From Macrostomum lignano (taxonomy: Eukaryota), in NCBI GenBank assembly GCA_002269645.1, contig NIVC01001698.1, forward strand, positions 124,001 to 188,000: 64,000 nt of DNA, in the 5' to 3' direction. How positions within the stretch are numbered: position 1 is the first letter of the stretch; each line of letters begins with the position of its first letter. Below, piece by piece: positions 6,801-31,600 of this stretch. The notes beneath the pieces were generated by a model that was given only the letters and a program-made list of their open reading frames with translations, was not told where the DNA came from and made no database searches. A program made the position numbers and the translations under genes.

Positions 6801-9800
6801 CGCAGGCCGGCCAGGTCTGGTTCCCGGACAGCGCGTTTAAAACCTCCGCTGCTATTCGCGACTTCGGCCGCGAGGGCCTCCCGCTGATGGTGTTCGCCAA
6901 CTGGAGGGGCTTCTCCGGCGGCATGAAGGACATGCACGACCAGGTGATTGGCTGCTGGCCTGTGCCCTGCTTTGTGTGGCTTGCGAAAGCTATGCGCGTG
7001 TGTCAGTAGCTATGCGCGTGTGTCAGTACCTATGCGCGTGTGTCAGTAGCTATGCGCGTGTGTCAGTAGCTGTGCGCGTGTGTCAGTAGCTATGCGCATG
7101 TGTCAGTAGCTGATATGAGTATGTGTCAGTAGCTGATATGAGTATGTGTCAGTAGCTGATATGAGTATGTGTCAGTAGCTGATATGAGTATGTGTCAGTA
7201 GCTGATATGAATATGTGTCAGTAGCTGGTATGAGTATGTGTCAGTAGCTGATATGAGTATGTGTCAGTAGCTGATATGAGTATGTGTCAGTAGCTGATAT
7301 GAATATGTGTCAGTAGCTGGTATGAGTATGTGTCAGTAGCTGATATGAGTATGTGTCAGTAGCTGATATGAGAATGTGTCAGTAGCTATATGAGTATGTG
7401 TCAGTAGCTGATATGAGAATGTGTCAGTAGCTATATGAGTATGTGTCAGTAGCTACTTTTTCTAGGTGATGTAGCTGATGGCAGTGCCCTTTTTAATAGT
7501 TGCTTTAAGAAATATCGGAAAAAAGAGATTTTTTGCATAAGATATTTTTCTGCTATCCACTCTTATAACACCCTGGCCGATTCCACTCAGATCCTGAAGT
7601 TCGGCGCCATGATAGTGGACGCCCTGTGCAAGTACCCCAGCCCCGTGATGGTCTACATACCGCCGCAGGCTGAGCTGCGCGGCGGCGCCTGGGTTGTCAT
7701 CGACCCGTCAATCAACCCGGACATGATGGAGATGTACGCTGACGCCGACTGCCGCGGCGGGGTGCTGGAGCCCGAGGGCACCATCGAGATTCGCTACAGG
7801 GAGCGGGAGCTGGTCAAGACCATGCAACGGCTGGACGACCGCTGCGCCGCGCTGCTCAAAGCCGTGTCAACCGGCGGCGACGCCGAGGCGGCCAGGTCGG
7901 CTGAGCGGGCCCTGCTGGCCAGGCAGAAAGAGCTGCTGCCGGCCTACACGCAGGTGGCGCTGCGCTTCGCCGACCTGCACGACACGCCTGGCCGGATGCT
8001 GGAGAAGGTGGGCTGCGGGTTTTGGGAAGATGGGTCAAGATTGGGTCAAGCTGGAGCATATTGGGTCAAGCTGGAGCATATTGGGTCAAGTTGGAGCATA
8101 TTGGGTCAAGTTGGAGTATATTGGGTCAAGTTGGAGCATATTGGGTCAAGTTGGAGCATATTGGGTCAAGCTGGAGCATATTGGGTCAAGTTGGAGCATA
8201 TTGGGTCAAGTTGGAGCATATTGGGTCAAGTTGGAGCATATTGGGTCAAGTTGGAGCATATTGGGTCAAGTTGGAGCAGATTAGGTCAAGTTGGAGTATA
8301 TTGGGTCAAGTTGGAGTATATTGGGTCAAATCGGAGCATTTTGGGTCAAGTTGGAGCATATTGGGTCAAGTTGGAGCATATTGGGTCAAGTTGGAGCATA
8401 TTGGGTCAAGCTGGAGCATATTGGGTCAAGTTGGAGCATATTGGGTCAAGTTGGAGCATATTGGGTCAAGTTGGAGCATATTGGGTCAAGTTGGAGCATA
8501 TTGGGTCAAGTTGGAGCATATTGGGTCAAGTTGGAGTATATTGGGTCAAGTTGGAGCATATTGGGTCAAGTTGGAGTATATTGGGTCAAGTTGGAGTATA
8601 TTGGGTCAAATCGGAGCATTTTGGGTCAAGTTGGAGCATATTGGGTCAAGTTGGAGCATATTGGGTCAAGTTGGAGCATATTGGGTCACGTTGGAGTATA
8701 TTGGGTCAAGATTGGGTCAAGCTGAAGCATATTGGGTCAAGATTGGGTCAAGCTGAAGCATATTGGGTCAAGATTTGGTCAATATTGGGTCCAGCTGGAG
8801 CTTTTTGGGTTAAGTTGGAGCATATTGGGTCAAGATTGTGTTAAGTTGGAGCATATTGGGTCAAGTTGGAGCATATTGGGTCATGATTGGGTCAAGTTGG
8901 AGCATATTGGGTCAAATTGGAGTATATTGGGTCAAGTCGGAGCATATTGGGTCAAGTTGGAGCATATTGGATCAAGTTGGAGCATATTGGATCAAGTTGG
9001 AGCATATTGGGTCAAATTGGAGTATATTGGGTCAAGTTGGAGCATATTGGATCAAGTTGGAGCATATTGGATCAAGTTGGAGTATATTGGGTCAAGATTG
9101 GGTCAAGCTGAAGCATATTGGGTCAAGATTTGGTCAATATTGGGTCCAGCTGGAGCTTTTTGGGTTAAGTTGGAGCATATTGGGTCAAGTTGGAGCATAT
9201 TGGGTCAAGCTGGAGCATATTGGGTCAAGTTGGAGCATATTGGGTCAAGTTGGAGCATATTGGGTCAAGTTGGAGCATATTGGGTCAAGTTGGAGCATAT
9301 TGGGTCAAGTTGGAGCAGATTAGGTCAAGTTGGAGTATATTGGGTCAAGTTGGAGTATATTGGGTCAAATCGGAGCATTTTGGGTCAAGTTGGAGCATAT
9401 TGGGTCAAGTTGGAGCATATTGGGTCAAGTTGGAGCATATTGGGTCACGTTGGAGTATATTGGGTCAAGATTGGGTCAAGCTGAAGCATATTGGGTCAAG
9501 ATTGGGTCAAGCTGAAGCATATTGGGTCAAGATTTGGTCAATATTGGGTCCAGCTGGAGCTTTTTGGGTTAAGTTGGAGCATATTGGGTCAAGATTGTGT
9601 TAAGTTGGAGCATATTGGGTCAAGTTGGAGCATATTGGGTCATGATTGGGTCAAGTTGGAGCATATTGGGTCAAATTGGAGTATATTGGGTCAAGTCGGA
9701 GCATATTGGGTCAAGTTGGAGCATATTGGATCAAGTTGGAGCATATTGGATCAAGTTGGAGCATATTGGGTCAAATTGGAGTATATTGGGTCAAGTTGGA

Positions 9801-12041
9801 GCATATTGGATCAAGTTGGAGCATATTGGATCAAGTTGGAGTATATTGGGTCAAGATTGGGTCAAGCTGAAGCATATTGGGTCAAGATTTGGTCAATATT
9901 GGGTCCAGCTGGAGCTTTTTGGGTTAAGTTGGAGCATATTGGGTCAAGTTGGAGCATATTGGGTCAAGCTGGAGCATATTGGGTCAAGTTGGAGCATATT
10001 GGGTCAAGTTGGAGCATATTGGGTCAAGTTGGAGCATATTGGGTCAAGTTGAAGCATATTGGGTCAAGTTGGAGCAGATTAGGTCAAGTTGGAGTATATT
10101 GGGTCAAGTTGGAGTATATTGGGTCAAATCGGAGCATTTTGGGTCAAGTTGGAGCATATTGGGTCAAGTTGGAGCATATTGGGTCAAGTTGGAGCATATT
10201 GGGTCACGTTGGAGTATATTGGGTCAAGATTGGGTCAAGCTGAAGCATATTGGGTCAAGATTGGGTCAAGCTGAAGCATATTGGGTCAAGATTTGGTCAA
10301 TATTGGGTCCAGCTGGAGCTTTTTGGGTTAAGTTGGAGCATATTGGGTCAAGATTGTGTTAAGTTGGAGCATATTGGGTCAAGTTGGAGCATATTGGGTC
10401 ATGATTGGGTCAAGTTGGAGCATATTGGGTCAAATTGGAGTATATTGGGTCAAATTGGAGTATATTGGGTCAAATTGGAGTATATTGGGTCAAATTGGAG
10501 TATATTGGGTCAAATTGGAGTATATTGGGTCAAGTCGGAGCATATTGGGTCAAGTTGGAGCATATTGGGTCAAGTTGGAGCATATTGGATCAAGTTGGAG
10601 CATATTGGGTCATGATTGGGTCAAGTTGGAGCATATTGGGTCAAATTGGAGTATATTGGGTCAAGTTGGAGCATATTGGATCAAGTTGGAGCATATTGGG
10701 TCATGATTGGGTCAAGTCGGAGCATATTGGGTCAAGTTGGAGCATATTGGGTCATGATTGGGTCAAGTCGGAGCATATTGGGTCAAGTTGGAGCATATTG
10801 GATCAAGTTGGAGCATATTGGATCAAGTTGGAGCATATTGGGTCATGATTGGGTCAAGTTGGAGCATATTGGGTCAAATTAGAGTATATTGGGTCAAGTC
10901 GGAGCATATTGGGTCAAATTGGAGTATATTGGGTCAAGTCGGAGCATATTGGGTCAAGTTGGAGCATATTGGATCAAGTTGGAGCATATTGGATCAAGTT
11001 GGAGCATATTGGGTCATGATTGGGTCAAGTTGGAGCATATTGGGTCAAATTGGAGTATATTGGGTCAAGTCGGAGCATATTGGGTCAAGTTGGAGCATAT
11101 TGGATCAAGTTGGAGCATATTGGGTCAAGTTGGAGCATATTGGGTCAAGTTGGAGCATATTGGGTCAAGTTGGAGCATATTGGGTCATGATTGGGTCAAG
11201 TTGGAGTATATTGGTTCAGGATTAAGTCAAGTTAAAGTATATTGGGTCAAGATTAGGTCAAGTTGGAGCAGATTAGGTCAAGTTGGAGCATATTGGGTCA
11301 ACTTTGGGAAATCGGATCAAGATTAAGTCAAGGCTGAGCAGATTGGGTTAAGGCTGCGATATCAGTCAAGATTAGGTAAGGTCAAAGTTGGTCAAATTGA
11401 GTAAAGGTTATGAAAATCAAAGTTTAGATCAAGAAAGTAACAAATTGGGTCACGGCTGAGATGATTAGGTCCAAGGTTGAGCAGATTGTGTCACTGTTGG
11501 TCTTAGCCTGCTGTTTCCACAAAGTCGCGCAACCGCCGTTCTCTACCCGCAGGGCTGCATCTCGGCAGTCATCCGCTGGGAGTCGGCGCGCCCATTTTTT
11601 TACCACCGCCTGCGCCGGCGCCTAGCAGAGGAGCGCGCACTCCGCGTCATCCAGGTGCCAACCGGACAGTCGCGCGCCGCCTGCCTGTCCTCGCTGCGCC
11701 GGCTGTTCCTGGACACGCAGACGGGCTCGGCGGCCTCCGCCCACTACGACTCAGACAACGCCGCAGTGGCCGACTGGCTGTCCGAGCAGCTGGCCGAGTT
11801 CGAGTCCGGCCAGTCCTCAGGCTCCCTGGCGGGCCACATTACCCAATGCCGCCGCGACCATGCGCTTGCCCAGATGCAATCGTTGCTAAGCAGCAATCCC
11901 AGTGTTGCTATGGACGCCGTGGTGCACGCGCTGGGCACGATGGCTCCTGAGGAGCGGGCCAGGGTGGAGACCTACCTGGGCAGCCTGTCTGGCCGGGTGG
12001 CAGCCGAGCCGGGGCAGCAGACGCGGGTGAACTTTTCCTGA
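893..12041 (+). CDS. ACC: Acetyl-CoA carboxylase, 3' part (central region plus carboxyltransferase domains); 5' exons lie upstream of the window
   Basis: Exons with AG/GT ends and consistent phases: 893-1352, 2431-2622, 3936-4727, 4821-5224, 5610-5940, 6383-6943, 7591-8007, 11553-12041 (stop TGA); an upstream intron runs off the window start. ACC motifs: [108 protein letters not shown]. Confidence 0.97.
1371..2224. repeat. Intronic minisatellite, 33-40 bp units with core GGGAATTATC(C/A)GGGACAGG
   Basis: Tandem array in ACC intron 1353-2430; the unit variant changes along the array. Confidence 0.95.
2695..3870. repeat. Intronic minisatellite, 21 bp unit CTACCCTACTGTGGTTATATT
   Basis: Tandem array in ACC intron 2623-3935. 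Confidence 0.95.
5350..5613. repeat. Intronic minisatellite, 39 bp unit containing CAG|GTAC, ending in the true acceptor
   Basis: AG at 5376, 5413, 5452, 5491, 5530, 5569 and 5608; the last one is the acceptor of the exon starting at 5610. Confidence 0.93.
6066..6253. repeat. Intronic minisatellite, 18 bp unit ATTTGGGGTCACTGAAAG
   Basis: About 10 copies in ACC intron 5941-6382. Confidence 0.93.
6991..7453. repeat. Intronic minisatellite, 20-23 bp unit with core TGTGTCAGTAGCT
   Basis: Tandem array in ACC intron 6944-7590. Confidence 0.93.
8032..11300. repeat. Intronic satellite, 20 bp unit TTGGAGCATATTGGGTCAAG, with a 759 bp higher-order repeat
   Basis: Fills ACC intron 8008-11552; near-identical ORF translations start at 8732, 9491 and 10250 (period 759). 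Confidence 0.96.
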
Positions 12042-13085: not shown

Positions 13086-16000
13086 TGTCTGAGTGGGTCA
13101 TGTGTCTGAGTGGGGTCATGTGTCTAAGTGGGTCCTGTGTCTGAGTGGGTCATGTGTCTGAGTGGGGTCATGTGTCTAAGTGGGGTCATATGTCTGAGTG
13201 GGTCATGTGTCTGAGTGGGGTAATGTCTGAGTTAGAGTAGGGTCGTGTCTGAGTGGGGTCATGTGTCTGAGTGGGTCATGTGTCTGAGTGGGTCATGTGT
13301 CTGAGTGGGGTCATGTGTCTGAGTGGGTCATGTGTCTGAGTGGGTCATGTGTCTGATTGGGGTCATGTGTCTGAGTGGGGTCATGTGTCTGAGTGGGGTC
13401 ATGTGTCTAAGTGGGTCATATGTCTGAGTGGGTCATGTGTCTGAGTGGAGTTGTGTGTCTGAGTGGGTCATGTGTCTGAGTGGAGTTGTGTGTCTGAGTG
13501 GGGTCATGTGTCTGAGTGGTGTCATGTGTCTGAGTGGGGTCATGTGTCTGAGTGGGGTTGTGTGTCTGAGTGGGTCATGTATCTGAGTGGGTCATGTGTC
13601 TGAGTGGGTCATGTTTCTGAGTGGGTCATGTGTCTGAGTGGGGTCATGTGTCTAAGTGGGTCATGTGTCTGAGTGGGTCATGTATCTGAGTGGGTCATGT
13701 TTCTGAGTGGGTCATGTGTCTGAGTGGGGTCATGTGTCTAAGTGGGTCATATGTCTGAGTGGGTCATGTGTCTGAGTGGAGTTGTGTGTCTGAGTGGGGT
13801 CATGTGTCTGAGTGGTGTCATGTGTCTGAGTGGGGTCATGTGTCTGAGTGGGGTTGTGTGTCTGAGTGGGTCATGTATCTGAGTGGGTCATGTGTCTGAG
13901 TGGGGTTGTGTGTCTGAGTGGGTCATGTATCTGAGTTGGTCATGTGTCTGAGTGGGGTCATGTGTCTGAGTGGGGTTGTGTGTCTGAGTGGGTCATGTAT
14001 CTGAGTGGGTCATGTGTCTGAGTGGGGTCATGTGTCTGAGGGGGTTGTGTGTCTGAGTGGGTCATGTGTCTGAGTGGGGTTGTGTGTCTGAGTGAGTCAT
14101 GTATCTGAGTGGGTCATGTGTCTGAGTGGGGTCATGTGTCTGAGGGGGTTGTGTGTCTGAGTGGGTCATGTATCTGAGTGGGTCATGTGTCTGAGTGGGG
14201 TCATGTGTCTAAGTGGGTCCTGTGTCTGAGTGGGTCATGTGTCTGAGTGGGGTCATGTGTCTAAGTGGGGTCATATGTCTGAGTGGGTCATGTGTCTGAG
14301 TGGGGTCATGTGTCTAAGTGGGTCATGTGTCTGAGTGGGTCATGTATCTGAGTGGGTCATGTTTCTGAGTGGGTCATGTGTCTGAGTGGGGTCATGTGTC
14401 TGAGTGGGTCATATGTCTGAGTGGGTCATGTTTCTGAGTGGAGTTGTGTGTCTGAGTGGTGTCATGTGTCTGAGTGGGGTCATGTGTCTGAGGGGGTTGT
14501 GTGTCTGAGTGGGTCATGTGTCTAAGTGGGTCATGTTTCTGAGTGGGTCATGTGTCTGAGTGGGGTCATGTGTCTAAGTGGGTCATGTGTCTGAGTGGGT
14601 CATGTATCTGAGTGGGTCATGTTTCTGAGTGGGTCATGTGTCTGAGTGGGGTCATGTGTCTAAGTGGGTCATATGTCTGAGTGGGTCATGTGTCTGAGTG
14701 GAGTTGTGTGTCTGAGTGGGGTCATGTGTCTGAGTGGTGTCATGTGTCTGAGCGGGGTCATGTGTCTGAGTGGGGTTGTGTGTCTGAGTGGGTCATGTAT
14801 CTGAGTGGGTCATGTGTCTGAGTGGGGTTGTGTGTCTGAGTGGGTCATGTATCTGAGTTGGTCATGTGTCTGAGTGGGGTCATGTGTCTGAGTGGGGTTG
14901 TGTGTCTGAGTGGGTCATGTATCTGAGTGGGTCATGTGTCTGAGTGGGGTCATGTGTCTGAGGGGGTTGTGTGTCTGAGTGGGTCATGTGTCTGAGTGGG
15001 TCATGTGTCTGAGTGGAGTTGTGTGTCTGAGTGGGGTCATGTGTCTGAGTGGGTCATGTGTCTGAGGGGGTTGTGTGTCTGAGTGGGTCATGTATCTGAG
15101 TGGGTCATGTGTCTGAGTGGGGTCATGTGTCTAAGTGGGTCATATGTCTGAGTGGGTCATGTGTCTGAGTGGAGTTGTGTGTCTGAGTGGGGTCATGTGT
15201 CTGAGTGGTGTCATGTGTCTGAGTGGGGTCATGTGTCTGAGGGGGTTGTGTGTCTGAGTGGGTCATGTGTCTAAGTGGGTCATGTGTCTGAGTGGGTCAT
15301 GTATCTGAGTGGGTCATGTTTCTGAGTGGGTCATGTGTCTGAGTGGGGTCATGTGTCTAAGTGGGTCATATGTCTGAGTGGTGTCATGTGTCTGAGTGGG
15401 GTCATGTGTCTGAGGGGGTTGTGTGTCTGAGTGGGTCATGTGTCTGAGTGGGGTTGTGTGTCTGAGTGGGTCATGTATCTGAGTGGGTCATGTGTCTGAG
15501 TGGGGTCATGTGTCTGAGGGGGTTGTGTGTCTGAGTGGGTCATGTATCTGAGTGGGTCATGTGTCTGAGTGGGGTCATGTGTCTGACGGGGTTGTGTGTC
15601 TGAGTGGGGTCATGTGTCTGAGGGGGTTGTGTGTCTGAGTGGGGTTATGTCTGAGTTAGAGTGGGTCATGTGTCTGAGTGGGGTCATGTGTCTAAGTGGG
15701 TCCTGTGTCTGAGTGGGTCATGTGTCTGAGTGGGGTCATGTGTCTAAGTGGGGTCATATGTCTGAGTGGGTCATGTGTCTGAGTGGGGTCATGTGTCTAA
15801 GTGGGTCATGTGTCTGAGTGGGTCATGTATCTGAGTGGGTCATGTTTCTGAGTGGGTCATGTGTCTGAGTGGGGTCATGTGTCTAAGTGGGTCATATGTC
15901 TGAGTGGGTCATGTGTCTGAGTGGAGTTGTGTGTCTGAGTGGGGTCATGTGTCTGAGTGGTGTCATGTGTCTGAGTGGGGTCATGTGTCTGAGTGGGGTT

Positions 16001-16707
16001 GTGTGTCTGAGTGGGTCATGTATCTGAGTGGGGTTGTGTGTCTGAGTGGGTCATGTATCTGAGTGGGGTCATGTGTCTGAGTGGGGTTGTGTCTGAGTGG
16101 GTCATGTATCTGAGTGGGTCATGTGTCTGAGTGGGGTCATGTGTCTGAGGGGGTTGTGTGTCTGAGTGGGTCATGTGTCTGAGTGGGTCATGTGTCTGAG
16201 TGGGGTCATGTCTGAGTTAGAGTGGGGTCGTGTCTGAGTGGGTCATGTGTCTGAGTGGGTCATGTGTCTGAGTGGGGTCATGTGTCTAAGTGGGGTCATA
16301 TGTCTGAGTGGGTCATGTGTCTGAGTGGGGTAATGTCTGAGTTAGAGTAGGGTCGTGTCTGAGTGGGGTCATGTGTCTAAGTGGGTCATGTGTCTGAGTG
16401 GGGTCATGTCTGAGTTAGAGTGGGGTCGTGTCTGAGTGGGTCATGTGTCTGAGTGGGTCATGTGTCTGAGTTGGGTAATGTCTGAGTTAGAGTAGGGTCG
16501 TGTCTGAGTGGGGTCATGTGTCTGAGTGGGTCATGTGTCTGAGTGGGGTCATGTGTCTGAGTGGGTCATGTGTCTGAGTGGGGTCATGTGTCTGAGTGGG
16601 GTCATGTGTCTAAGTGGGTCATATGTCTAAGTGGGTCATATGTCTAAGTGGGTCATGTGTCTGATTGGGGTCATGTGTCTGAGTGGGTCATGTATCTGAG
16701 TGGGTCA
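13086..16707. repeat. Satellite array, 17-18 bp unit GAGTGGG(G)TCATGTGTCT
   Basis: About 3.6 kb tandem array between the convergent 3' ends of ACC and the SLIMP-like gene. Confidence 0.96.
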
Positions 16708-17036: not shown

Positions 17037-19064
17037 TCACTCGGGCCACACCGTGCGCAGCAGGGAGCCGCAGTCCAGCAGGCAGGTGTGCACCAGGCTG
17101 AGCGGCTGGCCGCGCGGGTTCAGGCACATCAGCCTGCGGCCCACAAACTCATCCAGCTGGGCCGCGCTGGCCACCGGGACCGGCGCCAGGCTGTCCGAGT
17201 CGCGGCTCTCCAGCGTCCAGTCGATGCGACGCGACTCGCCAAGCCGCAGGCGCTCCAGCGGCACCGTCCGGGCGACGATGCGACGCTGGCGGCCCGGAAG
17301 CGGCAGCTCATTGGCCAGGCGGTGCCAGACAGCACTGGCAAGTTCGACAGTCTCGGCGAAGGCGGCGTCGCAGGCGGCGGCCGAGACGGAGCCGTGCAGC
17401 AGCGAGAGGGCCTCGGCGGACTGGCGGCCCGGCGCGTGCAGGCGGCCCCGACAAGCCAGGCGGATCGGCAGGCTGGCGGTGGATGCCTGGCGGCGGCCCA
17501 GCTGGGCGGCCATGGCGGGCAGGGAGGCGGCGCCCACCAGGAGGAGCCGCAGGTGCGGGTTGTCGGCCGAGTCGGCACTGTCCCGCTTATCGGCCGGCAG
17601 GTCGATGGCGTCGGCTTCCGACCAGCCGCAGGCGGCGAGCACCGGCGCGGTGACCCAGTCCGGGCCGCGGGTCAGCAGCCAGCCGTGGCCGGCGGAGTTG
17701 ACGGCCTCGGCCGTCAGGCTGGCGGCGGCGTCCATCGCGCGGCTCTGCAGGCGGAGGCCGGCCGGCTCTACGAATTCAAGCTGCCGGCCGGCCAGGCGGA
17801 GGCGGCGCAAACCGGGCGGTGACGGCGTCTCTTCGGCTGCCATGTCGACGGAGAAGTCCGGAGCCGCGGCAGAGTCCGGGTGCAGCCGGTTGGGCAGTCC
17901 GAGAGCGCGGTCCCAGAAGGCGTCATTCAGTCTCCTGGGGAGGTCGGCGATGGTGGCGCGGGTTGCGTGCGAATTTGTACTTTTGGCTCAGTGCCATGGG
18001 TACTCATGAGAAACACACCGGTACTCATCCTTCAGTCCATAAGAAACACACCGGTACTCATCCTTCAGTGCCATGAGAAACACACCGGTACTCATCCTTC
18101 AGTGCCATGAGAAACACACCGGTACTCATCCTTCAGTGCCATGAGAAACACACCGGTACTCATCCTTCAGTGCCATGAGAAACACACCGGTACTCATCCT
18201 TCAGTGCCATGAGAAACACACCGGTACTCATCCTTCAGTGCCATGAGAAACACACCGGTACTCATCCTTCAGTGCCATGAGAAACACACCGGTACTCATC
18301 CTTCAGTGCCATGAGAAACACACCGGTACTCATCCTTCAGTCCATGAGAAACACACCGGTACTCATCCTTCAGTCCATGAGAAACACACCGGTACTCATC
18401 CTTCAGTGCTATGAGAAACACACCGGTACTCATCCTTCAGTGCCATAAGAAACACACCGGTACTCATCCTTCAGTCCATGAGAAACACACCGGTACTCAT
18501 CCTTCAGTCCATGAGAAACACACCGGTACTCATCCTTCAGTGCCATGAGAAACACACCGGTACTCATCCTTCAGTCCATGAGAAACACACCGGTACTCAT
18601 CCTTCAGTGCCATGAGAAACACACCGGTACTCATCCTTCAGTGCCATGAGAAACACACCGGTACTCATCCTTCAGTGCCATGAGAAACACACCGGTACTC
18701 ATCCTTCAGTGCCATGAGAAACACACCGGTACTCATCCTTCAGCAGCTTGGCCTCAGAACTCTCCAGTCGCCTGCCGGGCTCCCGCAGTCTGCCCGCCGC
18801 ATTGCGAGCAGCCGCCAGCGCCTCAGCAGCGGCTCGGACCGTCGCCCAGCCGATCCGGTCGCCGCCGCAGCCGCCCCGGGCATCAATGCTGCCAGCCAGA
18901 GCCTCGGGATCGGCGAGCAGCACCTCGGGTGGATAGTCGGGGGCCAGGGTCGGTGAGAAGTCGCGCGCATAGTGGTCGTAGAGGACACGAGTGTTGATGC
19001 AGCGAGCAGAGGCTCGTGGACAGCACAATGCACTGGCTGCTGAGATGCTGCGAGCAATTATCAT
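17037..19064 (-). CDS. Mitochondrial seryl-tRNA-synthetase-like protein (SLIMP-like, likely non-catalytic), 2 exons, about 409 aa
   Basis: Exons 19064-18733 and 17934-17037, phase-2 junction giving AKLLKDE|RLNDAFWDRALGLPNRLHPD. Arg/Ser/Ala-rich presequence-like N-terminus. Recalled SerRS-like segments: LLADPEALAGSIDARG, ALGLPNRLHP, LVGAASL, LPIRLACRGR, VASAAQLDEFVGRRL, LVHT. Catalytic motif residues are degenerate. Confidence 0.8.
18004..18743. repeat. Intronic minisatellite, 33-34 bp unit including the exon end and 5' splice site
   Basis: About 22 copies; on the minus strand each reads CTGAAGGATGA|GTACCGGTGTGTTTCTCATGG(C)A. Confidence 0.95.
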
Positions 19065-19755
19065 GAGATTTTTTGAAAAAATTAATTTTGCATAATTATG
19101 CTACTTTCAGTAAAGAGTAAACAAACATCAATGTTACTGTGGATATTTTAAATAAAAAATTCATTTGGCAAGACCTTTTGGTTAGAGCTCTGGATGCTTT
19201 TCAGTTTTAAAAAAATTTCTAGAATTTCCAGATGTTCAAGTCAGCTGTCTTTGAATACCATGACTAGGCAAGGCACTAGTCATGGTAATCATGGTATGAC
19301 TAGGCAAAGCATTTAGCCTTGTAGGCCTATGCTATCTAGTATACAGACCAATTAATAAAAAAGATCTGCTTTTGCTTTTGCTTTCAAGTTATCTGCTTTT
19401 CTGAACAGGACTATTATTAAAATTAACAATCATAATCTTATATATAGTAATCAGATATCAAATAGGCAAGCAATATTTTCAAGTTTGATATATTTATTAA
19501 TAAGTCTCATTATTAATGTCTAATTCAGGATCAACTAAGTAACAAAATTAACATGGGACAAGTATACAAGGCAAAATTGAAAAATAAAACAAATAACAAG
19601 ATAGAAGCATAGAAAAAAGAAAATAAATATATAATATAAATGATTAAAAAACATACATGTGCAACTGCTGGCCGACCTGGCCGATCTGGCCACCGTAAAT
19701 TGTGGTGGACCAGGGGTGAGTCGCAAAAATGCCCAGCCTAAAGAATACAGACGTA

Positions 19756-22698: not shown

Positions 22699-25600
22699 TC
22701 AACTGCAGTCAGATGCCTCCAGATAGACGCGATTACTTAAATGGCGAAATGCCAGATAGGCAAACTCCAGCAGTTCCACAAAGAAGGCCATAGTGAGACC
22801 CAGGTACAGCGAGCAGAGGCCACCGATGCGGCTCACTAGCGCCTGAAAAGTGACAGTCAGCTTCTCCTCCTTCTGGATGGTGTCCACGCTTTTCCGTCGA
22901 ATCACAATGAACGCAAACTGCTTTTCGTCGTCTTTATTCGCGTCGAGAGAGGCGCCCGGGTGCGCACCGTCTCGCAGGCTGTTGGCGTGCACGTAGGCCA
23001 TCACTTGACGTCTCATCAGCTCGCGCTCTTCGGCGTCACCCATCGCTGCAGCTTTGAGAAGACCGGCCCAGCTGTGCGACTGGTTGAGCAGCCAGCGGAG
23101 CTGGAACTCCGAGTAGCGCCAGCCCGTGATGGACGCCGCTTGCTCGTAGAGTAACCTCTGGCAGCGCTTTTGGCACACGGCGCCGTCGGCAGCCTGACGG
23201 ATGGCACCGACGTCCAGCTGCTCCAGGCAGTACAGGCGGCTGCACGATCGGCGAGAGGTGAGCAGCAACACGTGAGAAAGCTGTGAGAAATACAATGCCT
23301 TCAATAATCCAGTCCATCATGAGTCATTTCGTCATTTCGTCATTTTGCTGCTAAATGTTGACTACAGGAATATTTCCGTCAGCATTTTCGAGATGTGATC
23401 GGGAATTGGACCGGACGGTTTGAAGGTCATTGCCAGTGCGGGTGCTCAGCTGAGTGTCGGATGAGCTGTACGTAAAGTAATCTGTACGATGTACGATCGA
23501 GTTTTTCATTTTCCCTTTCCAAAATAGAACGGCGAGTGCCAGCGACACTCCAAACTACTCAACTCGGCAAGTGGAACAGGCTGGGGCAGGGATATTGAGC
23601 AACTATGCCTACCTTTTGGCTAGGCTGAGCAGAGTGAAATGCTCTCTTTAATTTCCCGGCAAGTTCTCCACTTTACATCCTTGATCTCAGCTGAGCACCC
23701 GCACTACTGGCAATCCCTGACACTCATCAGCTGAGCACCCGCACTGGCAATCCCTGACACTCATAAGCTGAGCACCCGCACTGGCAATCCCTGACACTCA
23801 TAAGCTGAGCACCCGCACTGGCAATCCCCGACACCCATCAGCTGAGCACCCGTACTGGCAATCCCTGACACTCATCAGCTGAGCACCCGCACTGGCAATC
23901 CCTGACACTCATCAGCTGAGCACCCGCACTGGCAATCCCTGACACTCAGCTGAGCACCCGCACTGGCAATCCCTGACACTCAGCTGAGCACCCGCACTGG
24001 CAATCCCTGACACTCAGCTGAGCACCCGCACTGGCAATCCCTGACACTCAGCTGAGCACCCGCACTGGCAATCCCTGACACTCATCAGCTGAGCACCCGC
24101 ACTACTGGCAATCCCTGACACTCAGCTGAGCACCCGCACTGGCAATCCCTGACACTCATCAGCTGAGCACCCGCACTACTGGCAATCCCTGACACTCATC
24201 AGCTGAGCACCCGCACTACTGGCAATCCCTGACACTCATCAGCTGAGCACCCGCACTGGCAATCCCTGACACTCATCAGCTGAGCACCCGCACTGGCAAT
24301 CCTTGACACTCAGCTGAGCACCCGCACTGGCAATCCCTGACACTCATCAGCTGAGCACCCGCACTGGCAATCCCTGACACTCATCAGCTGAGCACCCGCA
24401 CTGGCAATCCCTGACACTCATCAGCTGAGCACCCGCACTGGCAATCCTTGACACTCAGCTGAGCACCCGCACTGGCAATCCCTGACACTCATCAGCTGAG
24501 CACCCGCACTACTGGCAATCCCTGACACTCATCAGCTGAGCACCCGCACTACTGGCAATCCCTGACACTCATCAGCTGAGCACCCGCACTGGCAATCCCT
24601 GACACTCATCAGCTGAGCACCCGCACTGGCAATCCCTGACACTCATCAGCTGAGCACCCGCACTGGCAATCCCTGACACTCATCAGCTGAGCACCCGCAC
24701 TGGCAATCCCTGACACTCATCAGCTGAGCACCCGCACTGGCAATCCCTGACACTCATCAGCTGAGCACCCGCACTGGCGATGGCACTCACTTGAAGAAGG
24801 CGGCGGTATTGTTGTAGTCGATGCGGCCGCAGTAGGGCAGCGCGGTGGTGGGCCGCGGCACCGGCCGGGGCAGCCGGGACAGCACGCAGCCGCACTCGGC
24901 CATGATGCGCTCGTTCAGCTGCTGGTCAATGCAGGCCGCATAGGAGTAGGTGTAGTTCACCCCCAGGTCAGTGATGACGGGCAGCCCAGACTCCTGGCAG
25001 CGATCGTTTGGGGAATCGTTGGCCTCACTCCAAAACACCGTGTCGAAGGCAATCTCCGTCATTTTGCCTGCGCGGTTGAGTTGGGTTACTCAGGAAACAT
25101 CTATTGATGAATAGCAAACTGTTTAATCTTCATCAATTATGCACAGAGCTGCTGGCAGATTCCCACTGCAACACAGAGCTGCTGGCAGATTCCCACTGCA
25201 ACACAGAGCTGCTGGCAGATTCCCACTGCAACACAGAGCTGCTGGTAGATTTCCACTGCAACACAGAGCTGTTGGCAGATTCCTACTGCAACACAGAACT
25301 GCTGTGAGATTCCTACTGCAACACAGAACTGCTGTGAGATTCCTACTGCAACACAGAGTTGCTGGCAGATTCTACACGTAACACAGAGCTGCTGGCAGAT
25401 TCTACACGTAACACAGAGCTCAATCCTCAATCCTGCTGCAGATTGAGATTGCAGATTGCTGGCAGATTCCAAATGTGTGTACTGCAACTACATGGCTGTG
25501 TTGGCAGTAACCCACCTGGCTCCACGTGCACCCCAGAGCGCTCCACATCCGGGAAGATGCCTTCCTCGTGCAGCAGCAGGCGCAGTCCAGTCGCCTGGTC

Positions 25601-28600
25601 GAAGACGTCCATGATGAAGGCCTCCGGGCCGGGTTTCCTCGGCGAGTTCAGCCTCAGGATGAGGTACATGGCCGACACCTGGCGGCTGTCCGCTGCCGGG
25701 CTGACTGAGTAGCAGTTGAAGTACCTGGGGCTGGACACCAGGCTGAAGGTGAGGCCGCAGTCCCTGGCCTTGCCAACAAAGGAGTAGCTGCCCTGAATGA
25801 TGAGGCAGTGCAGCAGCAGCTCGCCGGCCTTGTGCCCCATCTCAGTGGCCAGCTCCGGTTCCAGGTTCTGGTAGTACACGCTCAGCTTGTCGTACTGGGT
25901 CAGCTTGTGCGCCAGGTAGTCGCTGTTGCCTAGCAACAGCCGGCCGGTGAGATTGCGCAGCATCCGGTTGAAGTCGCTGGGCGAGAGGACTCCGCCGCGG
26001 CGCCACAGGCGGTGAGCGCCATGCGAGAATGGGTAGTGGCTGCACAGAGTGACGGTGGGGAAGGCGCTGGCATTGTTGAACAGCATGGAGGTCTGGATGG
26101 CCACATCGTAGTCCCAGTAGTTGCTGATGATGCGGCAGCTGGAGTACAGCAGCAGGAGGAACATCGTGAGCACGAACACCAGCCAGAGGGCGCGGAGGAA
26201 CCTCGAGCCGCTGTGTGCCACTTTGGAGACGCCGCGAAGCGAGCTGTTCTTGCAGAACAGGCGGCCCAGCTCGCTGCCCTGAGCTCCAAGGCGAGTCGTC
26301 GAGCCGGATGGCGCCGTCGACGAGAGTGCATTTGAAATCGGCGGCGGCGGCGGCGGCGGCGGCATCGTGTCGGCAACCTCGGACCCGTTGCGGCAGCGGG
26401 CGGGTGCGGAGCTTGTCAGCGGCTGCGAAAGAGGTGGAAGGAAAGAATGTCATCTGAAGCAGCGTCAGACAAACCTGCTGGACCTTCTGGACTGCGTGGA
26501 CACACACTGACGCGGACCTTGGTCCTGTTGTCGCGTGCAAAGGGGTGTCAAAACTTAGTCCCGAAGTGGAAGCGATGCATCAGAGCGGCGCGTAGAGAAA
26601 ATACGGCGGCCACGTAGACCCATGCAGGTGTCCAAGCTCCAGACTTGCCAGTCAAATTTCCAGGCAGATCTTCCTGTCGGAACTTCCAACGCTTCATTGC
26701 CCGAGAAGGTTGAGAAGCGCCGCTCTGATACATCGCTTTCATTTCGGGACTAAGTTGACAGCCCCTTTCTTGTACCTGGGCGACAGGCGACCCGCAGCCA
26801 GAAATGGAGGCAAGAGCATACGTGCCTGAGAACGCGGGTACACTTCTCAGAGGGTGTGCCGCGGCCCTGACTTTCTGTACTTGGGGGGGGGTTCCTCAGC
26901 CTCAGGCGAGCCTGAGAGGTATTTCGGCTTGAGTGCTACCGCCGACCTACTCTGTCTTTGCGTCCTCAGCTGTGACCTTTGCTTGCTTGCCAGCCGACAC
27001 AAAAGAACATTGGCCGATCCCACTCTGCCAGGCTCAGCCCCAGCTCCCGTATGATTTTATCCTACAGGTGTCGGAACTTCCATTAAGCGAGCTTCGATTT
27101 CAGCATCACATTTCTTGTCCCCTTAAACAGGAAAAGCCGAGTTGCTAAACAGTTGAGCCTCTGTTTGGCTTCTGGCCGGTTCGAATGCTTCCAGCTCTCA
27201 GAGGTGCAACCCCCCCCCCACCTGGGCAGAGCTGTAATTAATGCGATGGGGCTGCGGGACCTGCTGCTCTTGCTGTGTATTATTACTGCAGCCTTCGTGC
27301 CGGCATGAAACAAAATCTGGCACGGAAATTGATACGAGCCAACACTAGCAGGGTTGGCAGGAATGCTAATAAATTTTTGAGCTGAGTACTGGCGGGGGTT
27401 GGTGTCTGACTGTTGGGGCTGTAGTTTTTGTAAACATTCAAAACAGAAAAATATTTTGCAATCAGGCAAAAAACACTGAAATGTTTTGTTCCATGTAAAC
27501 GGAGAATCTTTGTTCTTAAAAAGAAACTGTTTATTAGATAGGCTATGAGGGGAGCTACTCGATAGGCTATGAGAGAAGCTACTAGCTAGATCGGCTATGA
27601 GGGAAGCTACTAGATCGGCTATGAGGGGAGCTACTCGATAGGCTATGAGGGAAGCTACTAGCTAGATCGGCTATGAGGGAAGCTACTAGATCGGCTATGA
27701 GGGGAGCTACTCGATAGGCTATGAGGGAAGCTACTAGCTAGATCGGCTATGAGGGAAGCTACTAGATCGGCTATGAGGGGAGCTACTCGATAGGCTATGA
27801 GGGAAGCTACTAGCTAGATCGGCTATGAGGGAAGCTACTAGATCGGCTATGAGGGGAGCTACTAGATAGGCTATGAGGGAAGCTACTAGATCGGCTATGA
27901 GGGGAGCTACTAGATAGGCTATGAGGGAAGCTACTAGATAGGCTATGAGGGGAGCTACTAGATAGGCTATGAGGGAAGCTACTAGATAGGCTATGAGGGA
28001 AGCTACTAGATAGGCTATGAGGGAAGCTACTAGCTAGATCGGCTATGAGGGAAGCTACTAGATAGGCTATGAGGGAAGCTACTAGCTAGATCGGCTATGA
28101 GGGAAGCTACTAGATCGGCTATGAGGGGAGCTACTAGATAGGCTATGAGGGAAGCTACTAGATCGGCTATGAGGGGAGCTACTAGATAGGCTATGAGGGA
28201 AGCTACTAGATAGGCTATGAGGAAGCTACTAGATAGGCTATGAGGGAAGCTACTAGATAGGCTATGAGGGGAGCTACTAGATAGGCTATGAGGGAAGCTA
28301 CTAGATAGGCTATGAGGGAAGCTACTAGATCGGCTATGAGGGAAGCTACTAGATAGGCTATGAGGGAAGCTACTAGATAGGCTATGAGGGGAGCTACTAG
28401 ATCGGCTATGAGGGGAGCTACTAGATAGGCTATGAGGGGAGCTACTAGATAGGCTATGTGGGGAGCTACTAGACAGGCTATGAGGGGAGCTACTAGATAG
28501 GCTATGAGGGGAGCTACTAGATCGGCTATGAGGGAAGCTACTAGATAGGCTATGAGGGAAGCTACTAGATCGGCTATGAGGGGAGCTACTCGATAGGCTA

Positions 28601-31600
28601 TGAGGGAAGCTACTAGCTAGATCGGCTATGAGGGAAGCTACTAGATCGGCTATGAGGGGAGTTACTAGATCGGCTATGAGGGGAGCTACTAGATAGGCTA
28701 TGAGGGAAGCTACTAGATCGGCTATGAGGGGAGCTACTAGATAGGCTATGAGGGAAGCTACTAGATAGGCTATGAGGGGAGCTACTAGATAGGCTATGAG
28801 GGAAGCTACTAGCTAGATCGGCTATGAGGGAAGCTACTAGATAGGCTATGAGGGAAGCTACTAGCTAGATCGGCTATGAGGGAAGCTACTAGATCGGCTA
28901 TGAGGGGAGCTACTAGATAGGCTATGAGGGAAGCTACTAGATCGGCTATGAGGGGAGCTACTAGATAGGCTATGAGGGAAGCTACTAGATAGGCTATGAG
29001 GAAGCTACTAGATAGGCTATGAGGGAAGCTACTAGATAGGCTATGAGGGGAGCTACTAGATAGGCTATGAGGGAAGCTACTAGATAGGCTATGAGGGAAG
29101 CTACTAGATCGGCTATGAGGGAAGCTACTAGATAGGCTATGAGGGAAGCTACTAGATAGGCTATGAGGGGAGCTACTAGATCGGCTATGAGGGGAGCTAC
29201 TAGATAGGCTATGAGGGGAGCTACTAGATAGGCTATGTGGGGAGCTACTAGACAGGCTATGAGGGGAGCTACTAGATAGGCTATGAGGGGAGCTACTAGA
29301 TCGGCTATGAGGGAAGCTACTAGATAGGCTATGAGGGAAGCTACTAGATAGGCTATGAGGGAAGCTACTAGATAGGCTATGAGGGAAGCTACTAGCTAGA
29401 TCGGCTATGAGGGAAGCTACTAGATAGGCTATGAGGGGAGCTACTAGATAGGCTATGAGGGAAGCTACTAGATAGGCTATGAGGGGAGCTACTAGATAGG
29501 CTATGAGGGAAGCTACTAGATAGGCTATGAGGGAAGCTACTAGATCGGCTATGAGGGAAGCTACTAGCTACATCGGCTATGAGGGGAGCTACTAGATAGG
29601 CTATGAGGGAAGCTACTAGATAGGCTATGAGGGAAGCTACTAGCTAGATCGGCTATGAGAGAAGCTACTAGATCGGCTATGAGGGGAGCTACTAGATAGG
29701 CTATGAGGGAAGCTACTAGATCGGCTATGAGGGGAGCTACTAGATAGGCTATGAGGGAAGCTACTAGATAGGCTATGAGGGGAGCTACTAGATAGGCTAT
29801 GAGGGAAGCTACTAGATAGGCTATGAGGGAAGCTACTAGATAGGCTATGAGGGGAGCTACTAGATAGGCTATGAGGGGAGCTACTAGATAGGCTATGAGG
29901 GGAGCTACTAGATAGGCTATGAGGGAAGCTACTAGATAGGCTATGAGGGAAGCTACTAGATCGGCTATGAGGGGAGCTACTCGATAGGCTATGAGGGAAG
30001 CTACTAGCTAGATCGGCTATGAGGGAAGCTACTAGATCGGCTATGAGGGGAGTTACTAGATCGGCTATGAGGGGAGCTACTAGATAGGCTATGAGGGAAG
30101 CTACTAGATCGGCTATGAGGGGAGCTACTAGATAGGCTATGAGGGAAGCTACTAGATAGGCTATGAGGGGAGCTACTAGATAGGCTATGAGGGAAGCTAC
30201 TAGCTAGATCGGCTATGAGGGAAGCTACTAGATAGGCTATGAGGGAAGCTACTAGCTAGATCGGCTATGAGGGAAGCTACTAGATCGGCTATGAGGGGAG
30301 CTACTAGATAGGCTATGAGGGAAGCTACTAGATCGGCTATGAGGGGAGCTACTAGATAGGCTATGAGGGAAGCTACTAGATAGGCTATGAGGAAGCTACT
30401 AGATAGGCTATGAGGGAAGCTACTAGATAGGCTATGAGGGGAGCTACTAGATAGGCTATGAGGGAAGCTACTAGATAGGCTATGAGGGAAGCTACTAGAT
30501 CGGCTATGAGGGAAGCTACTAGATAGGCTATGAGGGAAGCTACTAGATAGGCTATGAGGGGAGCTACTAGATCGGCTATGAGGGGAGCTACTAGATAGGC
30601 TATGAGGGGAGCTACTAGATAGGCTATGTGGGGAGCTACTAGACAGGCTATGAGGGGAGCTACTAGATAGGCTATGAGGGGAGCTACTAGATCGGCTATG
30701 AGGGAAGCTACTAGATAGGCTATGAGGGAAGCTACTAGATAGGCTATGAGGGAAGCTACTAGATAGGCTATGAGGGAAGCTACTAGCTAGATCGGCTATG
30801 AGGGAAGCTACTAGATAGGCTATGAGGGGAGCTACTAGATAGGCTATGAGGGAAGCTACTAGATAGGCTATGAGGGGAGCTACTAGATAGGCTATGAGGG
30901 AAGCTACTAGATAGGCTATGAGGGAAGCTACTAGATCGGCTATGAGGGAAGCTACTAGCTACATCGGCTATGAGGGGAGCTACTAGATAGGCTATGAGGG
31001 AAGCTACTAGATAGGCTATGAGGGAAGCTACTAGCTAGATCGGCTATGAGAGAAGCTACTAGATCGGCTATGAGGGGAGCTACTAGATAGGCTATGAGGG
31101 AAGCTACTAGATCGGCTATGAGGGGAGCTACTAGATAGGCTATGAGGGAAGCTACTAGATAGGCTATGAGGGGAGCTACTAGATAGGCTATGAGGGAAGC
31201 TACTAGATAGGCTATGAGGGAAGCTACTAGATAGGCTATGAGGGGAGCTACTAGATAGGCTATGAGGGGAGCTACTAGATAGGCTATGAGGGGAGCTACT
31301 AGATAGGCTATGAGGGAAGCTACTAGATAGGCTATGAGGGAAGCTACTAGATCGGCTATGAGGGAAGCTACTAGCTACATCGGCTATGAGGGGAGCTACT
31401 AGATAGGCTATGAGGAAGCTACTAGATAGGCTATGAGGGGAGCTACTAGATCGGCTATGAGGGGAGCTACTAGATAGGCTATTAGGGAAGCTACTAGATA
31501 GGTTATGAGGGGAGCTACTAGAAAGGCTATGAGGGGAGCTACTAGATCGGCTATGAGGGAAGCTACTAGATAGGCTATGAGGGAAGCTACTAGATAGGCT

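What the first reader, a model, noticed from the sequence alone, without database searches (positions are those of the whole stretch)
17037..19064. SLIMP-like pseudo-synthetase: mitochondrial SerRS paralogue lacking catalytic residues
The protein follows SerRS layout but the TxE serine-binding loop reads GAAS, motif 2 (F/Y-R-x-E...R.HQF) reads GRLHAPG...SLLHGS, motif 3 lacks NGT...R, and the C-terminus is short. The N-terminal LYDHYARDFSPTLAP...LAGSIDARG and LVGAASL/LPIRLACRGR segments resemble recalled Drosophila SLIMP, a non-aminoacylating partner of SerRS2 that also regulates mtDNA via LON. SLIMP is mainly characterised in insects, so a highly diverged copy in a probable flatworm would bear on its origin and distribution.
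Basis: partly seen in the sequence, partly recalled or inferred. Interest (0 to 1): 0.7.

Follow-up and report, generated by a model that had tools for sequence, protein, structure and literature searches.

The report
Flatworm SLIMP, a dead seryl-tRNA synthetase paralogue
This is a two-exon gene of the flatworm Macrostomum lignano for a very diverged copy of SLIMP, the catalytically dead partner subunit of the mitochondrial seryl-tRNA synthetase of invertebrates; the family is already known to be widespread, so this adds a phylum and little more.

Summary
Window 17037-19064 (minus strand) is a two-exon, 411-codon gene. It equals the Macrostomum lignano gene model Mlig007961.g1 (PAA64943.1), named only "hypothetical protein", and it matches no Pfam family.

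The protein is a full-length SerRS homologue of the SLIMP type. Its only hits among 1.84 billion representative proteins, apart from its own M. lignano cluster, are SLIMP-like proteins. A SLIMP profile built without it scores 89.5 bits, against 16.8 bits for a canonical mitochondrial SerRS profile. In a neighbour-joining tree the SLIMP/canonical split has 100/100 support with the candidate on the SLIMP side. It has the SLIMP state at 6 of 7 diagnostic columns. The serine- and ATP-binding residues are gone. The model built on a homologue alignment matches mitochondrial SerRS structures best.

Three intact paralogues with dN/dS 0.18-0.33 argue against a pseudogene.

De Potter et al. 2023 already showed SLIMP in most invertebrate phyla, though not in flatworms.

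Two features are unusual. The tRNA-binding arm is about 24 residues shorter than usual. The arm arginine that is essential in Drosophila is not at the aligned position.

The SerRS2alpha partner could not be searched for.

The parts
18727..19064 (-). Coding exon 1 (338 nt, residues 1-113 first two bases): presequence-like N-terminus, N-helix, first helix and start of second helix of the arm
   Evidence: ORF and sequence; junction KDEYR|RLND confirmed by PAA64943.1 / P0003
17935..18726 (-). Single intron (792 nt), GT..AG, almost wholly a 34-nt minisatellite
   Evidence: The paralogues have introns of 131 nt (g2) and 506 nt (g3) with fewer repeat copies
18005..18743 (-). 34-nt minisatellite, 21.9 copies, 98% matches. 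The unit contains the last 17 nt of exon 1 plus the 5' splice site, so the donor GAGTACCG|GTGTGT recurs about 22 times
   Evidence: Tandem Repeats Finder; sequence
17037..17934 (-). Coding exon 2 (898 nt including TGA at 17039-17037): end of the arm and the whole degenerate class II core
19062..19068 (-). Start codon region ctcATG|ATA. In paralogue g2 the same place reads CTTCAG|ATA, a consensus spliced-leader acceptor
   Evidence: Spliced-leader sequence and acceptor motif from PMC8629364
18987..19064 (-). Residues 1-26, presequence-like N-terminus (4 Arg, no Asp/Glu, rich in Ser and Ala)
   Evidence: Composition count; the mitochondrial targeting role is inferred
18945..18986 (-). Residues 27-40 VLYDHYARDFSPTL, equivalent of the mitochondrial SerRS N-helix (SALYI.G in SLIMPs, LLYEHAREGYS in bovine SerRS2)
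   Evidence: phmmer alignment to 1wle; alignment A1
17892..18878 (-). Residues 63-127 (spans the intron): shortened helical-hairpin arm from the invariant Arg of IDARG to LPN. The arm is 64 residues against 85-92 in most SLIMPs. E101/S102 lie where Drosophila SLIMP has R123
   Evidence: Arm lengths and alignment; model helices 70-94 and 102-123
17040..17891 (-). Residues 128-411: class II aaRS core with collapsed active site
   Evidence: SLIMP profile alignment over residues 92-406; Foldseek hits to SerRS structures
17520..17534 (-). Residues 247-251 G-A-A-S-L, in place of the serine-binding G-T-[AS]-E loop (Thr to A249, Glu to L251)
   Evidence: SerRS2alpha and SLIMP rows of the de Potter 2023 supplement
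17388..17447 (-). Residues 276-295, motif 2 equivalent: GRLHAPG in place of SRC[YF]RAE (Arg to A280, Glu to G282), shortened loop, RVHQF lost
17052..17099 (-). Residues 392-407, motif 3 equivalent: HTCLLDCGSLLRT in place of HT[VI]NGTA..PR. The protein ends 5 residues later

Best explanation
The gene encodes the Macrostomum lignano orthologue of SLIMP. SLIMP is the paralogue of mitochondrial seryl-tRNA synthetase that arose by duplication early in bilaterian evolution and lost its active site.

Shown here:
- It is a full-length SerRS homologue with an N-helix, a helical arm and a class II core.
- It groups with SLIMPs and not with SerRS2alpha or SerRS2.
- It lacks the serine- and ATP-binding residues.
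- It is kept under purifying selection in three intact copies.

Inferred from the Drosophila work (PMC10570016):
- After import into mitochondria it pairs with a catalytically competent SerRS2alpha subunit.
- It contributes the tRNA-binding arm in trans, so the heterodimer has one working site for charging mitochondrial tRNA-Ser.
- It cannot aminoacylate on its own.
- Any LON and mtDNA role is a further, weaker inference.

The flatworm copy is unusually diverged (about 20-26% identity to other SLIMPs, 72% GC). It has a shorter arm and a shorter C-terminus than most family members.
For: Database-wide search: phmmer against 1.84 billion representatives gave, besides its own M. lignano cluster, only 8 hits (E 1e-6 to 5e-4), and none was a canonical SerRS. 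Five of the 8 carry Pfam Seryl_tRNA_N and/or tRNA-synt_2b. One is a tick protein (Ixodes hexagonus) whose close relative in Ixodes scapularis NCBI names 'serine--tRNA synthetase-like protein Slimp'. Profile searches brought in further proteins named Slimp from a wasp, a snail and mayflies.

Profile scores: a SLIMP HMM built from 27 sequences without M. lignano scores the candidate 89.5 bits (E 9e-30) over residues 92-406. An HMM of SerRS2alpha, SerRS2 and fungal mitochondrial SerRS scores it 16.8 bits. The same pair of HMMs correctly separates five published SLIMPs, including the Drosophila prototype, from ten published SerRS2alpha/SerRS2 sequences.

Tree: in a neighbour-joining tree on 278 columns, the split of SLIMPs plus M. 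lignano from canonical enzymes has 100/100 bootstrap support. The split with M. lignano outside the SLIMPs has 0/100.

Diagnostic columns: the candidate has the SLIMP state at 6 of 7 columns and the canonical state at 0 of 7. It keeps 19 of 62 canonical invariant residues, like Drosophila SLIMP with 18, against 58-61 for the canonical enzymes listed.

Catalytic residues are lost.

Structure: the AlphaFold2 model from a 25-sequence alignment has pTM 0.71 and pLDDT 66. All top 50 Foldseek PDB hits are SerRS; the best are human and bovine mitochondrial SerRS at E 4.5e-11 to 5e-10.

Selection and expression: three paralogous loci have intact 1230-nt frames and dN/dS of 0.18-0.33. The gene models come from a transcriptome-based annotation (PMC5730564).
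Against:
- The tree is distance-based, and both SLIMPs and the candidate are long branches, so long-branch attraction is not excluded. The candidate's position inside an arthropod-like subgroup is surely an artefact.
- The canonical and some SLIMP sequences were typed from an OCR copy of a supplementary alignment and may carry small errors.
- The arm is about 24 residues shorter than in most SLIMPs, and the position of Drosophila R123 is E101/S102. R123 is essential for aminoacylation in Drosophila, so the tRNA-binding role may be altered.
- The structure model depends on an alignment of SerRS-like homologues, so it is not independent evidence of the fold.
- Mitochondrial targeting is judged only from composition.
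- Pfam itself detects nothing in the protein.
Confidence: 0.8

Rival explanations
1. It is a flatworm-specific degenerate duplicate of mitochondrial SerRS that lost its active site independently. It resembles SLIMP only by convergence and long-branch attraction.
For: The branch is very long and identity is low, about 20-26%. The published analysis lists only a 'SerRS2' for the flatworm Schistosoma mansoni. The placement within the SLIMP clade is implausible in detail.
Against: It shares specific derived residues with SLIMPs at 6 of 7 diagnostic columns: Thr to Ala, Ser to Gly before motif 2, Ala to Glu, Gly to Val and others. It shares the SLIMP-specific strings LVG[GA]ASLPAM, LP.RL...GR and D[YF][VI][SG][KR]RL. 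The profile scores differ by 73 bits. Bootstrap support is 100/100.
Confidence: 0.1
2. It is a SLIMP orthologue that no longer serves tRNA binding. With a truncated arm lacking the key arginine, it is kept only for a non-translational role such as the LON and mtDNA control or cell-cycle functions described in Drosophila.
For: The arm is 64 residues against 85-92 in most SLIMPs. E101/S102 lie where DmSLIMP R123 and human R146 lie. R123A and R123E abolish aminoacylation in Drosophila (PMC10570016). The C-terminus is also trimmed.
Against: A helical hairpin of about 25 + 22 residues is still predicted. R98 and R99 lie one helical turn upstream and could take over the contact. One other SLIMP-like protein has a 67-residue arm, and tick SLIMPs have Tyr at that position, so the family tolerates variation. 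The invariant Arg of the ARG motif, LPN and the N-helix are kept.
Confidence: 0.07
3. It is a decaying pseudogene or an annotation artefact in a GC-rich, repeat-rich region.
For: There is no Pfam hit. The composition is odd, with 18% Ala and 72% GC. The gene is flanked and interrupted by minisatellites. The UniRef names for the cluster are inconsistent.
Against: Three loci keep the complete frame with no stops or frameshifts, and dN/dS is 0.18-0.33. The gene models are transcript-derived. Homology runs over the full length.
Confidence: 0.03

Closest known systems
[quoted passage not shown] 2023, PMC10570016)
   Same: The layout is the same: presequence, N-helix, helical arm, class II core. The catalytic pocket is collapsed in the same way (TxE, motif 2, RVHQF, NGT). 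The derived residues are shared (G-A-S-L for G-T-x-E, G-R for S-R-C, E346, V365). There is no long C-tail. It retains 19 of 62 canonical invariant residues against 18 in Drosophila SLIMP.
   Different: It is far more diverged: 89 bits against the SLIMP profile, where other SLIMPs score 213-600, and no Pfam hit. The arm is about 24 residues shorter. There is no Arg or Lys at the R123-equivalent position. The motif 2 loop and the C-terminus are shorter. GC is 72%. It comes from a phylum (Platyhelminthes) for which no SLIMP is listed in the published survey.
SerRS2alpha / SerRS2 (catalytic mitochondrial seryl-tRNA synthetase; structures 1wle, 7tzb, 7u2a)
   Same: These are the best structural matches to the model (E 4.5e-11 to 5e-10). 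The N-helix is similar (LYDHYARDFS against LYEHAREGYS). The LPN.(T/L)HP motif is shared.
   Different: All residues that bind serine, ATP and the acceptor end are replaced. The canonical profile gives only 16.8 bits. SerRS2alpha of SLIMP-bearing species lacks the arm that this protein retains.
Other catalytically dead aaRS paralogues that serve as partner or regulatory subunits (for example HisZ with HisG, or the PheRS beta subunit); named from my own general knowledge
   Same: A class II synthetase fold is kept without aminoacylation chemistry and used as a subunit of another enzyme.
   Different: They have a different ancestry and different partners. The resemblance is only a functional analogy, and I did not test it.

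Membership tests
SLIMP | Full-length homology to SerRS (N-terminal arm domain plus class II core) | tested here: met
   Database-wide phmmer hits carry Seryl_tRNA_N and tRNA-synt_2b. The SLIMP profile gives E 9e-30. All top 50 Foldseek hits are SerRS.
SLIMP | Belongs to the monophyletic SLIMP clade, separate from SerRS2alpha and SerRS2 | tested here: met
   89.5 against 16.8 bits. The neighbour-joining split has 100/100 support. 6 of 7 diagnostic columns are in the SLIMP state. Caveat: the method is distance-based and the branches are long.
SLIMP | Collapse of the catalytic pocket (loss of the conserved serine, ATP and acceptor-binding residues) | tested here: met
   Thr and Glu of TxE become A249 and L251. 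The motif 2 Arg and Glu become A280 and G282. RVHQF and KVEMF are lost. NGT reads CLL.
SLIMP | [quoted passage not shown] | tested here: inconclusive
   A helical hairpin is predicted (helices 70-94 and 102-123). The arm is 64 residues against 85-92, and the R123-equivalent is E101/S102, with R98 and R99 one turn upstream.
SLIMP | N-terminal extension (N-helix) retained and C-tail absent | tested here: met
   VLYDHYARDF aligns with SALYI.G of SLIMPs and LLYEHAREGY of 1wle. The protein ends 5 residues after the motif 3 region.
SLIMP | Co-occurs with a SerRS2alpha gene that has an intact active site and no coiled-coil arm | not tested
None of the collections still searchable holds the M. lignano genome.
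SLIMP | Forms an obligate heterodimer with SerRS2alpha and has no aminoacylation or ATP binding alone | not testable with these tools
   This needs the partner sequence and biochemistry or a multimer prediction.
SLIMP | Mitochondrial localisation | tested here: inconclusive
   The first 26 residues have 4 Arg, no acidic residues and are rich in Ser and Ala. No targeting predictor was available.
SLIMP | Binding to LON protease and control of mtDNA level (Drosophila) | not testable with these tools
   Known only from Drosophila experiments (PMC10570016).
Canonical mitochondrial SerRS (SerRS2 / SerRS2alpha) | Class II motifs 2 and 3 and the TxE serine loop intact | tested here: not met
   Only 19 of 62 canonical invariant residues are kept, against 58-61 in the four canonical enzymes tallied.
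Pfam Seryl_tRNA_N (PF02403) / tRNA-synt_2b (PF00587) | Match to the curated profile at or above the gathering score | tested here: not met
   hmmscan found 0 families even at E <= 10. Homology is seen only through intermediate SLIMP sequences.

The most novel reading that the evidence does not exclude
Early-branching flatworms keep a SLIMP that has been remodelled. Its tRNA-binding arm is cut by about a third, the key arginine is moved or lost, and the C-terminus is trimmed. This may have co-evolved with the reduced mitochondrial tRNA-Ser of flatworms. Parasitic flatworms, for which only a single SerRS2 is listed, may have lost SLIMP. If so, Platyhelminthes would be a natural series showing how the heterodimeric mitochondrial SerRS is reshaped or reverts to a homodimer.
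Probability: 0.2. Interest if true: 0.5.

Novelty: new member of a known kind. Interest (0 to 1): 0.3.

Why it matters
It gives a functional name to a gene recorded only as 'hypothetical protein', or under inconsistent DUF names, in a flatworm model organism. It extends SLIMP to Platyhelminthes, a phylum not covered in the published survey. That supports the view that the heterodimeric mitochondrial SerRS dates to early bilaterians. M. lignano has working RNAi and transgenesis, so it could serve as a second, very distant system alongside Drosophila. Two questions could be asked there: whether the non-translational roles of SLIMP are ancestral, and how much of the tRNA-binding arm is needed. 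The gain is incremental, because the family, its mechanism and its wide distribution are already published.

Tried and rejected
1. My first splice model used the acceptor aaaag|T at 17979 and gave a 426-aa protein with an extra TNSHATRATIADLP. It was replaced by the acceptor at 17934 after comparison with the annotated M. lignano proteins.

2. Pfam on the candidate gave nothing. phmmer against PDB gave only a marginal hit to bovine mitochondrial SerRS (E 0.68).

3. The single-sequence AlphaFold2 model was useless (pLDDT 38).

4. Word-indexed searches with the Ala-rich candidate as first sequence returned almost only tick proteins, because the 8000-candidate limit was filled. A profile without the candidate worked better.

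5. The UniRef names of the 90% cluster are mutually inconsistent (DUF4461, Rad60-SLD and DUF2344 domain-containing protein) and are unsupported by the Pfam scan. I treat them as spurious.

6. I tried to learn the source organisms of the nearest Logan hits. P0009 and P0007 gave only run accessions SRR21676476 and SRR3401909, which cannot be resolved here.

7. I searched the literature for SLIMP in flatworms; among the listed papers none held SLIMP together with a flatworm term.

8. I considered and rejected three alternatives: a pseudogene (dN/dS), an active remodelled synthetase (no catalytic residues), and an extra hidden exon that would restore the motifs. The last fails because the annotated transcript-based CDS is continuous and aligns end to end with SLIMPs.
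Full report
**What is in the sequence.** The minus strand between 19064 and 17037 carries two long open frames in a very GC-rich stretch. Joined at a GT..AG intron they give a 411-codon reading frame. The donor is GAGTACCG|GTGTGT after 18727 and the acceptor is cctccccag|G before 17934. My first guess at the acceptor (17979) was wrong.

A word-indexed search found one 90% cluster, all from Macrostomum lignano. Its member PAA64943.1 (Mlig007961g1) is identical to my translation from residue 7 to the end. The gene segment occurs exactly in contig NIVC01001698.1 of assembly GCA_002269645.1.

**Is it related to SerRS?** Direct tests are nearly blind. Pfam finds nothing even at E <= 10. phmmer against all PDB sequences finds only the N-terminal part of bovine mitochondrial SerRS, at E = 0.68.

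An exhaustive phmmer scan of 1.84 billion representative proteins gave more. Apart from the M. lignano cluster it returned eight proteins of 400-530 residues, with database-wide E-values of 1e-6 to 5e-4. None of the very numerous canonical SerRS sequences appeared. Five of the eight carry Seryl_tRNA_N and/or tRNA-synt_2b. One is from the tick Ixodes hexagonus, and its close relative in Ixodes scapularis is named 'serine--tRNA synthetase-like protein Slimp' by NCBI. A profile of these proteins retrieved further proteins named Slimp from a wasp, a snail and mayflies, plus two canonical fungal-type SerRS as distant hits.

**SLIMP or canonical enzyme?** I built a SLIMP profile from 27 database sequences, leaving out M. 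lignano. It matches the candidate over residues 92-406 at 89.5 bits, E = 9e-30.

| Sequences | Score against SLIMP profile (bits) | Score against canonical profile (bits) |
|---|---|---|
| Published SLIMPs (not used to build the profile) | 213-303 | 57-168 |
| Published SerRS2alpha / SerRS2 | 110-180 | 424-499 |
| Candidate | 89.5 | 16.8 |

A neighbour-joining tree on 278 well-occupied columns of the core separates SLIMPs plus M. lignano from all canonical enzymes in 100 of 100 bootstrap replicates. M. lignano never falls outside the SLIMPs. It sits on a very long branch, and its exact position among arthropod-like sequences should not be believed.

The tree is distance-based and the branches are long, so I also looked at shared derived characters. 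There are seven columns where the canonical enzymes are at least 85% one residue and SLIMPs at least 60% another. The candidate has the SLIMP residue at six and the canonical residue at none. It keeps 19 of 62 canonical invariant residues. SLIMPs keep 18-35 and canonical enzymes 58-61.

**Active site.** In the alignment (with the published rows):
- The serine loop G-T-[AS]-E reads G-A-A-S-L, so Thr becomes A249 and Glu becomes L251.
- Motif 2 S-R-C-[YF]-R-A-E reads G-R-L-H-A-P-G, so Arg becomes A280 and Glu becomes G282.
- The loop and the RVHQF.KVEMF strand are shortened and unrecognisable.
- HT[VI]NGT reads HTCLLD.
- An Arg (R406) lies within one or two residues of the motif 3 Arg position. 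Some other SLIMPs, including the Drosophila one, also keep an Arg there.

**Fold.** A single-sequence model failed. With a 25-sequence alignment, AlphaFold2 gave pTM 0.71 and mean pLDDT 66. The model has a helical hairpin (helices 70-94 and 102-123) followed by an antiparallel-sheet core. Foldseek against the PDB returned only SerRS among the top 50. Human and bovine mitochondrial SerRS were first, at E 4.5e-11 to 5e-10 and TM 0.5-0.6. This is supportive but not independent, because the alignment consisted of SerRS-like proteins.

**Is it a working gene?** Three loci in the assembly hold intact 1230-nt frames: g1 is this window, g2 is L001 and g3 is L002. They differ by 12-15.5 non-synonymous and 17.5-24 synonymous changes, which gives dN/dS of 0.18-0.33. 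M. lignano is a hidden polyploid (abstracts), so several copies are expected. Purifying selection and transcript-based models argue against a pseudogene.

**What is unusual.**
1. Divergence and composition. The coding sequence is 72% GC with GC3 of 84%, and the protein is 18% Ala, 14% Leu and 11% Arg. Identity to other SLIMPs is about 20-26%.
2. The arm. From the invariant Arg of the ARG motif (R63) to the LPN motif (P127) there are 64 residues, against 85-92 in most SLIMPs (range 67-103). The gap falls at the tip of the hairpin.
3. The key arm arginine. Drosophila SLIMP has R123 and human SerRS2 has R146 at a position whose mutation abolishes aminoacylation (PMC10570016). The candidate has E101/S102 there, and R98 and R99 lie one helical turn upstream. 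Tick SLIMPs have Tyr at this position, so it is not invariant.
4. Termini and loops. The motif 2 loop is short. The protein also ends about 17 or more residues earlier than other members, while keeping a terminal WPE that aligns with the VP/WPG of relatives.

**Mechanism.** In Drosophila, SLIMP and SerRS2alpha form an obligate heterodimer (PMC10570016). SLIMP supplies the coiled-coil arm that holds the tRNA elbow, and SerRS2alpha, which has lost its own arm, supplies the single active site. The complex also binds LON and affects mtDNA.

I infer the same division of labour here. The homology, the dead active site and the retained (if shortened) arm are shown. The partner, the dimer, mitochondrial import and any LON role are inferred. 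The first 26 residues have four Arg and no acidic residue.

**Comparison with what is known.** SLIMP is no longer an insect curiosity. De Potter et al. 2023 place the duplication at the root of Bilateria. [quoted passage not shown] Flatworms are not mentioned in the text. I read five of the six parts of the supplementary alignment. The only flatworm row I saw is 'Schistostoma_mansoni_SerRS2', with a canonical motif 2, and a term search of the whole file found no flatworm SLIMP. A literature search for SLIMP together with flatworm terms listed no paper that holds both.

This is therefore a new member of a known family in a phylum where it had not been listed, and it is consistent with the published model. 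I rate interest at 0.3. The truncated arm gives a modest chance of something more instructive.

**Side observations.**
- The intron is almost entirely a 34-nt minisatellite whose unit includes the end of exon 1 and the splice donor. The donor is therefore repeated about 22 times here, but only about 2.5 and about 13 times in the paralogues.
- The start codon is not conserved. g2 has CTTCAG|ATA at the same place, and two UniRef models translate a CAG there. This fits the published trans-splice acceptor motif [T/C]TNCAG. The M. lignano spliced leader ends in TTGCATG, which would supply an in-frame AUG (PMC8629364).
- g1 and g3 read CATG and GCATG in the genome. Mlig_3_7 was polished with RNA-seq reads (PMC5730564), so the genomic ATG in this window may be a polishing artefact.

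Noticed in passing
window 19062-19068 (minus strand); L001 about 2981-2989; L002 about 2981-2989: The start codon is not conserved among paralogues. The window reads ctcATG|ATA, g3 reads cgcATG|ATA, g2 reads cttCAG|ATA, and two UniRef models translate CAG (Q) here. CTTCAG fits the published SL trans-splice acceptor motif, and the M. lignano spliced leader ends in ...TTGCATG, which would donate an in-frame AUG. The assembly was polished with RNA-seq, so the genomic CATG/GCATG may be a polishing artefact that copies the SL end.
   Followed up: partly
window 18005-18743: The intronic 34-nt minisatellite (21.9 copies, 98% identical) has a unit that includes the last 17 nt of exon 1 and the 5' splice site. 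About 22 identical donors therefore follow the real one, and using any later one would shift the frame. Copy number differs between paralogues: the introns are 792, 131 and 506 nt.
   Followed up: partly
window 13086-16707, 8040-11301, 27535-31641 and more than 20 other arrays: The window is packed with long minisatellite arrays, with units of 12-70 nt and up to about 200 copies. Many are G-rich on the plus strand, which explains the strong GC skew at 8-16 kb and 28-38 kb. Several appear to lie in the intervals between the coding stretches of the neighbouring genes.
   Followed up: no
window about 3990-8040 (plus strand): These are the 3' exons of an acetyl-CoA carboxylase gene (ACC_central and Carboxyl_trans domains). 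They correspond to the 2102-residue model that runs off the end of locus L003.
   Followed up: partly
window 22699-26365 (minus strand): Exons of an amiloride-sensitive sodium channel (DEG/ENaC, Pfam ASC) gene.
   Followed up: no
window 47962-52614 (plus strand): An uninterrupted 1550-codon ORF with aspartyl protease, reverse transcriptase, RNase H and integrase domains in Ty3/gypsy order. It is a probably recent LTR retrotransposon copy. Flanking ORFs at 46841-47806 and 52987-54018 have no Pfam match. The sequence was not printed or assembled.
   Followed up: no
L004 (Logan SRR21676476 contig, 2089 nt): P0009, the SLIMP-like protein nearest to M. lignano in the tree, is encoded on a transcript contig downstream of a second ORF (zf-C2H2_jaz, 114 aa). 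This suggests a polycistronic or operon-type transcript in an unidentified animal.
   Followed up: no
Protein cluster of P0001 (UniRef A0A1I8HSK4, A0A1I8GWE1, A0A1I8HRD1): Near-identical M. lignano proteins carry three unrelated UniRef names (DUF4461, Rad60-SLD and DUF2344 domain-containing protein). None is supported by a Pfam scan of the window-encoded copy, so the names look spurious.
   Followed up: partly
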